This document shows positions 41,421 to 48,484 of a stretch of 64,000 nt of DNA, piece by piece. The notes under the pieces were generated by a model, which did no database searches, had not been told where the DNA came from, and saw only the letters and a program-made list of their open reading frames with translations. The translations under genes and the position numbers were made by a program. Position 1 is the first letter of the stretch; every line of letters starts with the position of its first letter. This DNA is from Adineta vaga (Eukaryota; Animalia; Rotifera), in the NCBI GenBank assembly GCA_021613535.1, contig CP075495.1, forward strand, positions 4,712,001-4,776,000. Direction: 5' to 3'.

Positions 41421-41497
41421 AAGACTATCATCTTTCTTTCTTTATTAAAACAACAACAATAACAAGACAAAAATAAACATAAGAAAATCAATCTATT

Positions 41498-42330
41498 TTA
41501 TTTATTTATTATATTTAAACCATTTTGTATCGCTTTTTGTAATGGAGAATTATTTTCATATGGAGAAAATTCTAAATCAATGACTGATGAACGTTGAATA
41601 ATTGAAGAATACTTTTCATTCGTATAATCCTAGATTGATGTGTAGTTTAAAGACAATAATTACTTATACAAATGAGATCAGTGTTGTCTTACACTATTAC
41701 TATCATTGAGTTGATTGCTAATATCTAATAGAAAAACAAAACAAAGAAATAAATGAAAACTAGAAAGAATAGTAATATACTTTTTAATAATAAGGTTTCA
41801 TCATAGTCATGTGCTCCTTCATCTTCTATTCCTGAACTTTGATCCATTTCATCGTTTTGGTCATCTAAACAAAAAGTAGTATCGTATGACTACAAGGCAT
41901 GTTTTTTTCGATTTGACGAGTAGTAATGTGACTTTCTAAGCTCAAAGACGAAAACTGAATATAAGTCTTTGTTAAATTTAATGTTATAGAACTTTTAATA
42001 CAAAGAAGGAAATATGTAACATACATCCTGTTGCATTGAAATCGAGCGTATCAGGAACATTAAAGCAAGCTGGAGGTGGTAATGGTGTTTTTCGTTTATG
42101 TATTGCAGTTTTAAAAAGATCTGAAAATAGATATATGTATATTAATTACATTCTTTTACATCGATTGTTATACCTGAAGCAGGAGGAGGAGTTGGTGCTG
42201 CTGCAACAGCAGCAGTCTGTGTTGTAGAATAAACCTGGCTGAACTGTTGTTGTCGACTTAAATAATATGTCAATGGATACCGAGTTTTCAGTAATGTATT
42301 CAAGACTGATTCTTCAGTTGATTGAGCCAT
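41498..42330 (-). CDS. Hypothetical small multi-exon low-complexity protein
   Basis: MAQSTEESVLNTLLKTRYPLTYYLSRQQQ... followed by short GT-AG-bounded exons; no recognisable domain. Confidence 0.4.
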
Positions 42331-42564
42331 TACTATACTTTTCTCGAAAAATTGAATGAATGATTTGAATGTATAAGTATATCTCATTTCGAATGGAAAG
42401 CGCGTTGAAAAGATAGTGATGTCGCTACATTCTACATATGAAAATGAACTATCGATTGGTTCATAGAATTTCTTACATTGTTTAGCGGGTTCTTTGTCTT
42501 TCCATCTGCATCGTACATTGAATTCTGTTCTTCTGTTTTCACATCTCACTCTCGAAAAATAATA

Positions 42565-45500
42565 ATGAGTATAAATCTTCGTCAAAAATTAGTAAGTTAA
42601 TCGAATCTTCAAACATTTTTCTCGTTCATAAAAAAACAAAACAAACTTATTTTGTCTTATAGAGACAATTAAATAAACAGAAAGAAGAATTTAATCATGA
42701 TGATCAAAATGTCGATCTTCATAAATCAACAACATCGACAACAACACCGATTCAATTAAAAAAAACTCCTGCAAAACAACAAATTCTTCATCCAAAATCC
42801 TTAAATATAAATAATCCTGATGTAACATTAACAACTGAAGAACTTCATCGACGAGAACAAGGTTCGAATTTGTTTTTCTTTACGAAATTTCATGTCATCT
42901 TCATTTCATTTCCTTTAGAATTCAATGATGATATGCAACGTGAATGTGGTCAAGATGCTGAATGGAAAAAAATTCAACAGAATACATTTACACGATGGAT
43001 GAATGAACGTCTGAAATTAGTTCATCGACATATTGATAATCTACAAACAGATCTCAGTGATGGATTAAATTTAATCGCTTTAATTGAAATTTTAGTTAAG
43101 AAAAAATTACCACGATATAATCATCGTCCACAATTTCGTTCACAAAAATTAGAGAATGTTTCAGTTGTTCTTGATTATCTTGAAAATGTTGAGAAACGAC
43201 GTTTAGTTAATATTGATGCAACAGATATTGTTGATGGAAAAATGAAATTAATTCTTGGACTTCTATGGACATTAATTTTACATTATTCAATTAGTTTACC
43301 TGCTTGGGAATTGCCCAATGAAAAAAGAGAAACATTACAAAATGTGAAACCAAAACAAAAACTAATGACTTGGTTACAAGCAAAATTATCATCGCAACTT
43401 AATATTGCAAATTTTACTTCAGATTGGAATGATGGACGCGCTATTGGTGCTGTCATTAATTCATGTTATCCAGGTATAACATAGTTTCTATTGTCGAAGA
43501 CAGGAGGAGACAAGAAAATCTATATATTTAGGTTTATTTCCAAATTGGGCGGATCGAGATCCAAACAATGCATTGGAAAATGCTAGAGAAGCAATGGATT
43601 TAGCTGAAAAATGGCTTGGTATTCCACAGGTAATAAATATATTTTATAGTTTCAATGAAATAATATAGAATTTATAGTTAATTCAACCTCATGAAATGAT
43701 AAATCCTCAAGTTGATGAACAATCAATGATGACATATTTATCACAATATCCAAATGCTCAATTAAAACCTGGTGCACCTGTAAAACCAAAAAATCATGCG
43801 AATCAAGTTCATTGTTACGGTCTAGGTAAGAAAACTGAAAATCCAATTATTATTCTTACATACTTTTGTTCAAATCTAGGTCTTACTCAAACAGAACATA
43901 TCGTCGATAAACCAGTTATTTTTCATATTGAAACATGTGCAGCTGGTTTAGGTAAAGTTGATGCAATTGTTGTTAATCCCAGTGGTCAAACAGAAGAAGT
44001 AAGAAATAGTTTTAAAAGAAAATATATCAACATTATTTTGTATAACCATTTAGTGTACGATTGAATTTCGTGAAGATACTAATCGAACATATGATTGCGT
44101 TTTTTATCCGACTCTTAAAGGAGAATATAAAGTAAGTTGATACAAAGATTCTTCGTTGATTTTATCGTAATTATTGTTGTTTTAAAAGATTATTATTACA
44201 TTCAATGAACAAGAAGTTCCTCATTCACCTTTTCTAATCAATGTCGATGCACCAACAATACCTGAAATTATAATTAATGATGATGATGATGATGATGTTG
44301 ATTCACCAGGCAACGGAATTACACGTAAGTTGATGATTAATTTTTAAATAAAACAAAGAGTTTTGAAAATGTCCTTGTCTATTTTGATATTGAATAGCTT
44401 CTGATGGTGAACAGCCAGTCTATGAAAATTTAAAACAAACAAATGCGATTATCTATGATCGGCAAAGTTCAACAGAAGTCAAAATCACAAATTTAGATGA
44501 AGAAAATGATGATATTATCCTTCGAGAAGATCACATTTATTATGCATGTGTAAGTAATTCAATATCGTACAAAGAAAAATAAGATTTAATATCTTGTCAT
44601 TCTTTTTTTCTTAGCAAACAAATATTGCATCAATACAAGATCATCAACTTCGTCGTCAAATCTCTACGCGTTCTATATCCGATCCGACATTAAATAAACA
44701 TACATTTTTCTCTCCAATAAAACCACCACGAACATATTGTCATGATGAAAATGAAGAAGAATTGGTTTGATCTTTTTCTTACAAATCTTTTCTTTATAAA
44801 ACAATCTTTTCTTTCTTTTCATAGAATGAATCACCACTTGTATATAGTTTAACTGATTATCGTTTAAAACAGAAACGCCCTGATAGTTACGATATTCCAA
44901 TAGTAAATCAACCGAATTCCATCATTACAAGTTCAACAACATTAAATTCAACAACATCATTATCGAATGATGATAATACACAAGAAAATAAACGCTTAAC
45001 ATCAAAATGGTTAATTATCGATGAAATAAATGTGAGAAAGAAAAAGATTATTTTTTCTTTAGATTTTTCAACTAATTTGTTTTATTATTTCTAGCGTTTA
45101 ACTGATCTATCTAAACGAGAAACGTCAACATTAACACAAACATCACATGCATTAAAATGTTGTTCGAATGATCCACATGCCGCTTTATCAGATAAAAAAA
45201 TTGAATGTGAACGTGTTATTTTTATGGCTCGTATGTAATTCATGGTATTAAATTCTTCAATTAATTATATTTTTTCTTTCTATTTAGGACAAAAATTAAC
45301 ATCCTATAATAGTGAAATCAGACGTTTGGAAAATCTTGATCCAGATAGTGAATATTATTCTTCAGATATTTCACATAGTACATTGATATTGCAAGATATT
45401 CGTCTAGCTATCAAAGAAGATTATTTACGATCGTTACGAAAAGGCAAAGGTTTGTGTTTTCGAATATTATTTATTGATAATTTCATGTCTTGGTTTTTTT

Positions 45501-46750
45501 TCTAGAAACGAAATTTTATTTTTTTATGTGTGCTGTTCATTATCGATCACAAACACTTTTCTCACATATGGTTTCGTCATTTGATACTTTACAAACGAAT
45601 GGACAAGTTATTTTTTCAAATCGAATGATTATTCGAGAAGTAGAAAGTCAATTTGCAGCAACTATTGGTGTTTACTGCATGGTAGGTTAAGTTTGAGAGA
45701 AAACGCTTCATCAAGATCATCATGCGATCGAATTGATAAATAGAAAATTGACACTCTAACATTTAGGAAATTACAATGAAACATCCAATTACTGGACTTG
45801 ATCAATCACCCGTTGTTTGTTCACATCATCATGTCTCATCATCAGCAAATACGAGTCAATGTATGCAATGTGATAAACAACGATTGAATTCAACCGGTAT
45901 GACGTTCAATTTTTTGAGTAGAAGACTATATTTTTTTAAATAACTTTTAGTATCAATACCTGGTCAACATTCGAAAACAAATACCATGATCCGTGTTAGC
46001 AATTTCTTTCAAGTTGATGCAATTACTATTCGTAAAGAAGATTTGAAGACACAAGAATTTATGCTTTCTGTAAGTTTAGATGATATAATTAGTAAATTAA
46101 TAATAACTTGTCTTGTCATAGATTTCATCAGCATCAATTCCATTAAAACATAAATTATACGTTAAATTACAACGTTTATCCGAATTAAAAATTCGTAAAG
46201 CTGGTTATTTGGTATGGATCTTTTGTTCATATTATTTCATTTGATAGAGAGTCGTTGTTTTTTTACTATTTCGATATTTAGACAATCTATTGTGATATAA
46301 GTGGATCAGGTGTATGGATTCGTCGATGGTTTACTTTAACTAATGAACAAAATCTCCGTTATTGGCCATCACCTGAAGATGAAGAAAATAATATCGTGAG
46401 TTTCGAATAAATTGACATATCAATTTCATTCTTTTGTTTAAATTTTTTAGCCACCAACAGGTGAAATTGATTTACATTATTGTATTGATCAAACTATTAG
46501 TGTTTTACAACGAGAAACATGTGCTCGACCACATACATTTGAATTACGTATTGCTATTCCGATTAAAAAATCATCTGATTTTGACCAACATGAAGATCAT
46601 CCAAGTAGTTCAATCATCTCTCAACCATTTGGTAAACGAACATTATATCGATTTTGGTTAAGTGCTGATTCAAGAGAAGATCGTAATGAATGGTGTAATA
46701 TACTTAATCAAATCTTAGGTGATTTACGTGAATGGGAAGTGATTACTTAA
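42565..46750 (+). CDS. Filamin-anillin chimeric protein: CH1-CH2, one filamin Ig repeat, linker, anillin RBD/AH(C2) and PH domains
   Basis: Filamin: [15 protein letters not shown]...[13 protein letters not shown]...[13 protein letters not shown]...[10 protein letters not shown]...[14 protein letters not shown]...HSPF. Anillin: [16 protein letters not shown]...[42 protein letters not shown]...YWPSPEDE...GEIDL...[12 protein letters not shown]. Confidence 0.85.
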
Positions 46751-47149
46751 GAAACTGATCTAAATATTTCTTTTATTTTTTGGTCAATAGAAATATTATT
46801 TTTATAGATCAGTATTTCATTCATGATTAGTTTCTTTCTTTTTTATATTATAATCTATATATGCAAATCAAACGTTCGCGTGTGTTTTGTTATGTTTATT
46901 TACATGGAGATATATTAGATCTGTATAGCGACGGAATGTACTTTTTTTCCCCCCCTTGTTATCTAAAGTGTGAAACTGTTTATATGTTGTAGAAAAAGAA
47001 AAACTTGATAATTTGATGAAATTTTCTTAATTAAATAGATAGATTTTTACATATTTGAAAATAATGATAGATGAATTAAATCTTTTCTTCGCTTGTTTGC
47101 TCGTAAAAAGAAAGTTTCATAAATTTAATGACAAAAAAATAGATTTTAA

Positions 47150-48484
47150 TTAAAGCACACCAATTGTATATGTTTTTCTATAATTTAAATTGTGAAAATT
47201 AACTCCATCTTCTGTTGAAACAGCTAATACATGTGTACCAAAAAGAGTATTCGCATATGGTATTGTATTATATGGCATTATAGAATTAATTTTGCCTGTT
47301 TTTGTAATATGTAATAAACGTCCAGATTCATAATCACTAATTAACCAATCTTCACCGATGAATGAATTACAATGATATGGTCGATTTGGATTCCAAATGA
47401 CATCGAGTGTTAATGACCATAGAGAAATTAATGTTTCTGATGATCGTAATTCCATTCGTGTTGTACTTTGTGAATTGTTTTTAATCAATAGAGCAAGTTT
47501 TTCTTTATGATATCGAAGTACATCAATAGATTCATCTTTATTACATACTTTGGATTGCCATTGTTGATCGAATTTTTTCGATGATAGAAGATCTATTTTC
47601 ATAATAGATGAACCCCATTCATTAGTAGATAGAAAAAGATATTTATCCGAACAAGTACATGATAACCATTTTTGTTTTTCTAGATTTTTTATTTTTTCCA
47701 ATGACATATTAATTTCATTGAGAAGAATAACATTTTTCGGTGTAAGTAAAATAAAACATCGCAATGCAATTGACCAACACATATCATAAATTCTTTCATA
47801 ACGCCATGGTATTTGACTGAAAATAAGTAATTCTTGATTGATAAAACATAAATTTGGTGCTTGATGTATAAGAAGTATTCGATCATTACATGCAAATGCA
47901 TGATAACTACCATCTGGCCGATGAATCGTTCGATAAACTGATGAAAGAATTGATAAATCATAGACTTCTTCATTAATACCTCGAATATTAATTAGATTAT
48001 TATCTAATGTTAAAGAACGAATACGTAGATCAATAAAATTTTCTTCGATCGTTTTTATTTGTCTTTCTAAATAATCAATCATAATGGATAATTCATAAAT
48101 ATCATCATGATTAGTTTCTCGTTCATGTATAAGTTTCTTCAATTTAATTTCAACTTGAGTAATTTCATCACGTTCTTCATCAATTTTTTCAGTAAATAAT
48201 CGTACAAGTTCTTGATCTTTTTGTTCAAAATATTCATCAATCTTTCGATGAGAATCGACACGCCATTGTTGCAGTTTTTCTCGATAATTATCGACGATTT
48301 TCGATATGTCAATCGATTGTATACGATTATTTAATGATTGAATCATATCCATAAAAGGATGTACACGACTATTAGGAAAATTATTATGTTCATTCAAATG
48401 AATAACACACACATTTTGTTGACAACAATGACAGAGAGCACGTGCAGTACGACTACATAAAGTAACAGTACATATTTGAGACAT
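47150..48484 (-). CDS. Intronless 444-aa protein: B-box-like zinc finger, coiled coil and beta-propeller-like C-terminus
   Basis: CTVTLCSRTARALCHCCQQNVCVIHLNEH; helical KLQQWRVDSHRKIDEYFEQK region; beta-rich C-terminal half (DMCWS, WLSCTCS, WLISDY). Confidence 0.75.
   Translation of the reverse strand: MSQICTVTLCSRTARALCHCCQQNVCVIHLNEHNNFPNSRVHPFMDMIQSLNNRIQSIDISKIVDNYREKLQQWRVDSHRKIDEYFEQKDQELVRLFTEKIDEERDEITQVEIKLKKLIHERETNHDDIYELSIMIDYLERQIKTIEENFIDLRIRSLTLDNNLINIRGINEEVYDLSILSSVYRTIHRPDGSYHAFACNDRILLIHQAPNLCFINQELLIFSQIPWRYERIYDMCWSIALRCFILLTPKNVILLNEINMSLEKIKNLEKQKWLSCTCSDKYLFLSTNEWGSSIMKIDLLSSKKFDQQWQSKVCNKDESIDVLRYHKEKLALLIKNNSQSTTRMELRSSETLISLWSLTLDVIWNPNRPYHCNSFIGEDWLISDYESGRLLHITKTGKINSIMPYNTIPYANTLFGTHVLAVSTEDGVNFHNLNYRKTYTIGVL

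What the first reader, a model, noticed from the sequence alone, without database searches (positions are those of the whole stretch)
42565..46750. Filamin-anillin fusion: a filamin actin-binding head on the anillin membrane/RhoA module
Seen in sequence: exons join in frame from the ATG at 42565 through a filamin-type tandem CH domain, one filamin Ig repeat and a ~200-aa low-complexity linker into the anillin C-terminal half. I traced splice phases from the ATG into the anillin homology region and found no stop. Established: anillin binds actin and myosin through an unstructured N-terminus and binds RhoA, lipids and septins through RBD-C2-PH, while filamin has ~24 Ig repeats and dimerises through the last one. 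Inference: exon shuffling made a probably monomeric linker that ties F-actin to RhoA/septin/membrane sites, for example in ring canals, syncytial tissue or the cortex. I do not know this architecture from elsewhere.
Basis: partly seen in the sequence, partly recalled or inferred. Interest (0 to 1): 0.88.

Follow-up and report, generated by a model that had tools for sequence, protein, structure and literature searches.

The report
Filamin-headed anillin of bdelloid rotifers
In two genera of bdelloid rotifers, the gene for anillin (the scaffold of the ring that pinches cells in two) has had its floppy actin-gripping region replaced by the folded actin-binding head of filamin; in Adineta vaga this is the only anillin found, so it is a natural test of what anillin needs in order to work.

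Summary
Confirmed and refined. Window 42565-46750 is one 19-exon gene (1031 aa; Adineta vaga UJR25922.1): CH-CH, one filamin Ig, then anillin RBD-C2-PH. Spliced RNA contigs from four studies cover both halves at similar depth; in two runs the halves overlap inside exon 8. Orthologous fusions occur in A. steineri and four Rotaria species. Didymodactylos carnosus (same syntenic locus) and Seison keep unfused anillin. No other of about 240 anillin-type proteins examined shows a CH domain. It is not a filamin head joined to an anillin tail. A DNA copy of filamin's 5' part, introns included, was inserted inside anillin and replaced the region carrying anillin's actin-binding-type motifs. Anillin's first 40 residues and its S635-type motif remain. 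At least one breakpoint lies inside an exon. This is the only anillin found in the genome: the homoeologous copy is gone, and the two other Pfam hits are rhotekin-like. Full filamins persist. Filamin actin-contact residues and the RhoA-binding A740/E758 equivalents are kept. The basic lipid-binding C2 loop is lost in all bdelloid anillins examined. Most likely it is the cytokinetic-ring tether, with one folded actin-binding unit instead of several short sites. Function is untested; no paper was found, and the scan had not noted it elsewhere.

The parts
42565..46750 (+). Whole gene, 19 exons, 1031 aa (A. vaga I4U23_007270 / UJR25922.1). Exons: 42565-42591, 42663-42861, 42919-43473, 43532-43629, 43678-43825, 43880-43998, 44054-44131, 44189-44324, 44398-44549, 44615-44764, 44825-45031, 45095-45230, 45288-45449, 45506-45681, 45767-45896, 45951-46069, 46122-46211, 46282-46395, 46451-46750
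42528..42564 (+). 5' untranslated part reached by the longest RNA contig (X1); contigs do not define the true start
   Evidence: record 1, 64 nt before 42663
42565..42755 (+). Anillin-derived N-terminus, aa 1-40, with intron 1 at the same place and phase as in Didymodactylos anillin
   Evidence: ungapped, p<0.001 against shuffles
42789..44248 (+). Filamin-derived insert, about aa 52-428: probable end of filamin exon 1, CH1, CH2, Ig repeat 1. All six internal introns match bdelloid filamin introns in place and phase
42972..43289 (+). CH1 domain, aa 94-199
43344..43758 (+). CH2 domain, about aa 218-320
43795..44248 (+). Single filamin Ig repeat, aa 333-428, closest to filamin repeat 1
44249..44324 (+). 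3' half of exon 8: acidic spacer of unassigned origin with a GAT (poly-Asp) microsatellite where RNA contigs break
44398..44971 (+). Retained anillin central region, aa 454-603; exon 9 matches Didymodactylos anillin exon 6; aa 505-570 are 88% identical among fusions and about 60% to Didymodactylos
44840..44863 (+). YS[IL]xxYR anillin motif, aa 560-567, inferred equivalent of human Y634/S635
   Evidence: PMC5230765; residue mapping is inference
44972..45334 (+). Rho-binding helical hairpin, aa 604-684; A642 and E660 align with human A740 and E758
45371..46184 (+). Anillin C2 domain, aa 697-885; its long loop (45767-45991) has lost the basic cluster and carries a CxxC motif
46197..46729 (+). Anillin-type PH domain, aa 890-1025
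46751..46978 (+). 3' untranslated region covered by RNA contigs

Best explanation
This is the anillin of Adineta and Rotaria, with its actin-binding part swapped. Shown: one expressed, conserved gene at the ancestral anillin locus. A DNA-level copy of the 5' part of the bdelloid filamin gene sits inside it, in place of the segment that in Didymodactylos carries two anillin actin-binding-type motifs. No other anillin was found in A. vaga. Inferred: it does anillin's core job at the cleavage furrow. The RBD binds RhoA-GTP, the C2-PH end engages septins and membrane, and the CH1-CH2 unit (with filamin's CH1-CH2 latch intact) holds one actin filament about 280 residues (Ig plus flexible linker) away. 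One chain would therefore tether F-actin to the RhoA/septin zone but not bundle filaments by itself. Direct myosin and formin binding are probably reduced or lost, and lipid binding through the C2 basic loop is probably replaced.
For: Single ORF and RNA path. 84-86% identity across A. steineri and Rotaria, 87-94% in the CH domains and 92-99% in the RBD. M14 peptidase upstream and L7Ae gene downstream shared with the unfused Didymodactylos locus. An 82-row anillin profile and three exon searches find only this locus; the C5 homoeologous block has the neighbours but no anillin. Motif [VIL][KRS]xxxx.FE occurs twice in both Didymodactylos anillins, in 26 of 72 other long anillins (about 0.05 expected each) and in 0 of 4 fusions. 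A39, W41, R96, R100, L104, V122, W142, K169 and E254 equivalents are kept (their roles from my own knowledge of the FLNa-actin structure 6D8C). The confident model of aa 600-1031 (pLDDT 86) matches anillin-RhoA 4XOI, TM 0.89 by target. Septin genes are present. The AH domain fused to another actomyosin anchor (MRLC-AH) largely rescues cytokinesis in anillin-depleted cells (10.1101/282756), so the N-terminal half is replaceable.
Against: No localisation, binding or knockdown data. Next to the Rho-binding residues, G752/E755/E756 become L/K/K in all bdelloid anillins examined, and the C2 loop has 4 K+R against a median of 10, so RhoA and lipid binding may have changed. The RNA contigs cannot assign tissue or stage. 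A very divergent second anillin could escape an exon-by-exon search. The filamin head has a long stem branch (0.39-0.49), so its properties may have shifted.
Confidence: 0.7

Rival explanations
1. Same gene, but its main selected role is as a stable cortical or intercellular-bridge anchor (germovitellarium bridges, syncytial epidermis, junctions) and not the dividing-cell ring.
For: From my own knowledge: adult bdelloids have fixed cell number and syncytial tissues, and in Drosophila both filamin and anillin sit at ring canals. Transcripts assemble in all four runs laid. The two roles are not exclusive.
Against: It is the only anillin found, and it keeps the motif inferred to match the furrow-recruitment site S635. 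No tissue data point to bridges.
Confidence: 0.15
2. The protein is an actin cross-linker after all: it dimerises or clusters (long RBD helix, N-terminal helix, CxxC loop, or on septin filaments), so several CH-CH heads bundle actin as cortexillin does in Dictyostelium.
For: Clustering of anillin is reported (PMC12402178). A long helix at aa 603-647 is predicted. A Cys/His-rich loop is shared by all five bdelloid sequences and none of 74 others.
Against: Filamin's dimerising last repeat is absent. Human anillin is monomeric at low concentration and bundles through multiple sites (PMC8319318), which are the motifs lost here. The CxxC loop is also present in the unfused Didymodactylos proteins.
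Confidence: 0.12
3. Annotation artefact: a truncated filamin copy and a separate anillin gene that are adjacent and only occasionally read through.
For: No single RNA contig spans the whole gene; all break near 44270-44400. One Rotaria Silwood-2 model (P0184) leaves the frame after exon 9.
Against: In X1 the 5' contig ends at 44297 and the 3' contig begins at about 44271, inside the same exon, at a polymorphic GAT repeat; X16 shows the same overlap through short bridging contigs. Depths of the two halves are 19.5/19.2, 4.1/4.17, 67.9/70 and 45.7/53. There is no stop after the Ig repeat. The first 40 residues are anillin's, so the filamin part lies inside the anillin gene. The same frame and intron phases are kept in three other species.
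Confidence: 0.02
4. On history only: the insertion is older than the Didymodactylos split, and Didymodactylos lost the fused copy while keeping unfused ones.
For: The fusion head is not nested in the Adineta+Rotaria filamins; it forms an unresolved three-way split with them and Didymodactylos filamin, AU p 0.48 both ways. It keeps one intron now seen only in Didymodactylos filamin. Didymodactylos assemblies are fragmented (PMC7943196).
Against: Both Didymodactylos copies are unfused and group together (98). No fused Didymodactylos protein appeared. This needs an extra loss.
Confidence: 0.25

Closest known systems
Metazoan anillin (human ANLN, PDB 4XOI/4XH3/2Y7B; Drosophila Scraps)
   Same: RBD-C2-PH C-terminal half (E 7e-43 to 4XH3; fold match to 4XOI), A740/E758 equivalents, YS[IL]xxYR motif, long flexible central region, single-copy locus orthologous to unfused Didymodactylos anillin.
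   Different: Folded CH1-CH2-Ig in place of the disordered myosin/actin-binding region; actin-binding-type motifs absent; no Anillin_N (PF16018) hit; basic C2 loop replaced by a CxxC loop (all bdelloids examined).
Filamin (FLNA/FLNB; PDB 4B7L is the same ABD+Ig1 fragment)
   Same: CH1-CH2-Ig1, E 5e-113 to 4B7L; 63-70% identical to bdelloid filamins; six shared introns.
   Different: One Ig repeat only; no rod, no mechanosensing repeats, no dimerising last repeat; lies inside another gene. Full filamins remain on C2 and C5.
Dictyostelium cortexillin I/II
   Same: Tandem CH1/CH2 actin-binding unit used at the cleavage furrow under Rho-family control (PMC13299636). Functional analogy only.
   Different: Unrelated C-terminus; a dimer that reaches Rac1 through IQGAP-like partners; no anillin domain.
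Engineered MRLC-AH and AH-alpha-catenin chimeras
   Same: Anillin's AH domain carried by a foreign actomyosin anchor supports contractility (10.1101/282756).
   Different: Laboratory constructs in cultured mammalian cells, with a myosin or junction anchor; here a natural actin anchor fixed across two genera.
Rhotekin
   Same: Shares the Pfam Anillin domain; accounts for the two other Pfam hits in the genome.
   Different: Short, HR1 directly after the start codon; not matched by the anillin profile.

Membership tests
Anillin | AH domain (Rho-binding hairpin plus C2) followed by C-terminal PH | tested here: met
Anillin | Orthology to unfused anillin (tree and synteny) | tested here: met
   clade with Didymodactylos anillins, support 100; shared neighbours and introns
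Anillin | RhoA-contact residues A740 and E758 | tested here: met
   A642 and E660; neighbouring charges reversed; binding itself untested
Anillin | Conserved YS[IL]xxYR (S635-type) motif before the AH domain | tested here: met
   aa 560-567; motif in 46 of 78 long sequences scanned, bdelloid rows included
Anillin (canonical metazoan form) | Disordered N-terminal half with multiple short actin-binding sites, myosin and formin sites | tested here: not met
   motif absent in 4 of 4 fusions, present twice in Didymodactylos; no PF16018 on P0141, though also none on unfused P0138
Anillin (canonical metazoan form) | Polybasic lipid/importin-binding loop in C2 | tested here: not met
   4 K+R against a median of 10; only 4 of 74 others have 5 or fewer
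Anillin | Localises to the furrow, binds RhoA-GTP, septins, F-actin | not testable with these tools
   needs bench work
Filamin | Filamin-type CH1-CH2 actin-binding domain | tested here: met
Filamin | Rod of many Ig repeats ending in a dimerisation repeat | tested here: not met
   one repeat only; not filed as a filamin
Classical exon shuffling (intronic recombination of a symmetric module) | Both breakpoints in introns of equal phase | tested here: not met
   3' end of filamin similarity lies inside exon 8, where filamin's exon continues into Ig2; the last 24 aa of exon 2 align with filamin exon 1 (p 0.0005-0.03 against Rotaria filamin, not significant against Didymodactylos filamin)
Retroposed copy | Loss of the donor's introns | tested here: not met
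   six filamin introns retained, one lost

The most novel reading that the evidence does not exclude
A whole animal lineage divides its cells with an anillin that cannot bundle actin or bind myosin by itself. Its only anillin uses one latch-regulated filamin head as a tether and a Cys/His loop in place of the lipid-binding loop. That would show in nature that multivalent bundling and entropic ring contraction by anillin are dispensable for animal cytokinesis, possibly in connection with syncytial anatomy or desiccation.
Probability: 0.35. Interest if true: 0.78.

Novelty: new variant of a known kind. Interest (0 to 1): 0.62.

Why it matters
Which of anillin's N-terminal activities (actin bundling, myosin binding, condensation) are needed for ring stability is open. 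Human anillin bundles and contracts actin rings as a monomer because it has several actin sites (PMC8319318), yet deleting the actin domain leaves furrow recruitment intact in fly cells (PMC3824009). Here evolution has done the swap in what appears to be the only copy of the gene and kept it under strong constraint in at least six species, with an unswapped relative at the same locus as control. The Adineta/Didymodactylos pair gives a direct rescue and reconstitution test. It is also a well-resolved case of a new domain architecture made by DNA-level insertion into a core gene, followed by loss of the unmodified homoeologue.

Tried and rejected
The spliced model was searched exon by exon by reference. 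Exons were joined only inside a script to check the reading frame. Whole-protein analyses used the database's own protein P0141.

First splice guesses at 43475 and 45684 were off by 1-2 nt and were corrected.

Full-length AlphaFold model from 6 sequences: pLDDT 33.6, uninformative, not used. ESM Atlas gave no usable hit, which shows nothing. PF16018 search of the genome was blank but its control was blank too, so it was not used as evidence.

The Pfam Anillin hits on C1 and C4 were first taken for canonical anillins. Rejected: on C1 the start codon lies directly before an HR1 repeat and the gene is short, and the anillin profile matches neither locus. The name rhotekin rests on this architecture and on my own knowledge; C4 was not read in full.

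The 44068-to-45703 joint (21 letters on the short side, non-canonical ends, loose ends on both sides) was rejected as a match from another transcript.

The origin of the 3' half of exon 8 could not be assigned. The donor's position among bdelloid filamins is unresolved. No monogonont or acanthocephalan anillin was recovered. Paper searches found no description of the fusion. Iwamoto 2018 (FLNa-actin structure) is not held, so residue roles are from memory.

Full report
1. The observation. The region holds 19 exons separated by 18 GT-AG introns of 48-85 nt. Joined in a script for a frame check, they give 1031 codons from ATG 42565 to TAA 46750 without an internal stop. Exon-by-exon Pfam scans found CH, Anillin and PH above or near cut-off and a weak Filamin hit. 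The database protein P0141, Adineta vaga UJR25922.1, lies on a contig of the same length as the window's (16,274,841) and contains every exon at the expected position. On it Pfam gives two CH stretches, Filamin 333-423, Anillin 699-812 and PH 890-1020.

2. One transcript. Contigs from four runs of four studies were laid on 42000-47300. They are spliced, hence cDNA. Fourteen introns appear as joints. No single contig spans the gene. In X1 and X16 the 5' contig runs by its length to 44297 in exon 8, and contigs entering exon 9 carry the last 54-55 nt of exon 8 (from about 44271) as a loose end. The halves thus overlap inside one exon, at a GAT repeat with allelic differences. Depths of the two halves are similar in every run (19.5/19.2, 4.1/4.17, 67.9/70, 45.7/53). 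Contigs cannot prove a single molecule, but no listed contig suggests an end after the Ig repeat or a second start.

3. Distribution. The same architecture is annotated, unnamed, in A. steineri, Rotaria sordida, R. socialis, R. magnacalcarata and R. sp. Silwood-1 and -2, at 84-86% identity for the three aligned, with matching intron positions and phases in the two read (A. steineri lacks one). Didymodactylos carnosus, sister to all other sampled bdelloids (PMC7943196), has two anillins with no CH or filamin domain. Seison anillin is also unfused. None of 127 library representatives found with the PH exon matches the head exons. None of the top 120 anillins lists a CH domain. Among the top 120 filamin-head hits of 567-1804 aa, only Adineta and Rotaria proteins carry Anillin or PH. 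These lists are partial, so an independent fusion elsewhere is not excluded.

4. How it arose. The fused gene sits where unfused Didymodactylos anillin sits, between an M14 carboxypeptidase and an L7Ae-family gene. Residues 1-40 align without gaps to Didymodactylos anillin 1-40, and intron 1 is shared. Exon 9 matches Didymodactylos exon 6, and introns 10-18 are shared. Between them lies filamin sequence. The heads form one clade (100/100) that groups with bdelloid filamins (98/96) on a long stem. All six introns inside the head match bdelloid filamin introns in place and phase; one of them is now seen only in Didymodactylos filamin. The copy was therefore DNA, not a retrocopy. Filamin similarity ends after the last strand of Ig1, inside exon 8, where filamin's exon continues into Ig2. 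At the other end, the last 24 residues of exon 2 align with the end of Rotaria filamin exon 1 right up to the shared phase-1 intron (p 0.0005-0.03; weaker evidence). So at least one and probably both breakpoints are within exons. The date is unresolved: simplest is the stem of Adineta+Rotaria, but an older origin is not rejected.

5. The only anillin found. A profile of 82 anillin C-terminal halves and three exon queries find this locus alone. The homoeologous block on C5 has the upstream and downstream neighbours within about 7 kb and no anillin trace. The two other Pfam Anillin loci (C1, C4) are rhotekin-like. Long filamin genes with many Ig repeats remain on C2 and C5. Septins are present.

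6. What was lost and kept. Lost: a motif of the type [VIL][KRS]xxxx.FE occurs twice in each Didymodactylos N-terminal half and in 26 of 72 other long anillins, against about 0.05 expected per shuffle, and in none of four fusions. I recognise it from memory as the type found in anillin's actin-binding domain; that role was not tested. Kept: the YS[IL]xxYR motif at 560-567, which I map by position to the conserved furrow-recruitment site Y634/S635 (PMC5230765). In the head, filamin A residues A39, W41, R96, R100, L104, V122, W142 and the K169/E254 pair are all conserved (mapped on bovine FLNA); the closest solved structure is filamin B ABD+Ig1, 4B7L, E 5e-113. In the tail, a confident model (pLDDT 86) matches anillin bound to RhoA (4XOI). 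A642 and E660 align with A740 and E758, which are required for RhoA binding (10.1101/282756). Changed in all five bdelloid anillins aligned, fused or not: charge reversal beside E758, and a C2 loop with 4 basic residues (median 10 elsewhere) plus a CxxC motif found in none of 74 others. These changes are older than, or independent of, the insertion.

7. Mechanism. Most likely (0.7) the protein is the cytokinetic scaffold. It is recruited by RhoA-GTP and septins through RBD-C2-PH and holds F-actin through one filamin ABD at the end of a flexible arm. All binding steps are inferred from conserved residues and homology. Replacement is plausible because the AH domain on a foreign anchor rescues cytokinesis and the fly protein still reaches the furrow without its actin domain (PMC3824009). 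The predicted difference is valency. Human anillin bundles and contracts actin as a monomer through several sites (PMC8319318), while one ABD without filamin's dimer repeat should only tether, unless the protein clusters. Rivals are a mainly structural role at bridges or cortex, cross-linking through oligomers as in cortexillin (PMC13299636), and a two-gene artefact, which the data nearly exclude.

8. Novelty. Both parts are well known, and the proteins stand unnamed in public databases. Four paper searches found no description; subscription journals are not covered. The scan's earlier notes hold nothing on anillin. I file it as a new variant of anillin: a member by orthology and C-terminal domains, failing two features of the canonical form, and not a filamin. 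Interest 0.62: the sequence case is firm and offers a direct test of an open question in cytokinesis, but it is confined to part of one class of animals and no function has been shown.

Noticed in passing
window 45767-45991 and P0128, P0138-P0140: All five bdelloid anillins aligned have lost the polybasic C2 loop and carry a CxxC motif with nearby His/Cys, absent from 74 other anillins; possibly a metal-binding loop.
   Followed up: partly
L019:6510-8260 (G000:C1 near 3.79 Mb) and G000:C4 near 10.35 Mb: Pair of short rhotekin-like genes (HR1 plus Pfam Anillin domain); the PH part of the C1 copy looks short or degenerate.
   Followed up: partly
window about 41475-42342, minus strand: Spliced, expressed gene head-to-head with the fusion, start codons about 220 nt apart; same arrangement in Rotaria and A. 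steineri; homoeologue on C5. Not identified.
   Followed up: partly
window 47150-48484, minus strand: 444-aa intronless ORF with a Cys/His-rich N-terminus and coiled region; several related copies in the C5 block and in A. steineri and Rotaria.
   Followed up: no
window 44278-44298: GAT microsatellite coding a poly-Asp run in exon 8; absent from the other three fusions aligned; allelic differences beside it break the RNA contigs.
   Followed up: partly
P0184 (Rotaria sp. Silwood-2, 812 aa): Model follows the fusion to the end of exon 9 and then runs into unrelated sequence; the Silwood-1 gene has a 1.3-kb intron there. Probably a misprediction; an alternative last exon is not excluded.
   Followed up: no
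window 25-36 kb and 47-59 kb against G000:C5:12.695-12.713 Mb: Parts of the window match the C5 homoeologous region in inverted order, while 37-48 kb matches 12.623-12.630 Mb in the same orientation: local rearrangement between homoeologues.
   Followed up: no
window 44048-44068 and 45703-45723: A deep contig from another transcript matches two 21-nt pieces here in all four runs and produces a false joint.
   Followed up: partly
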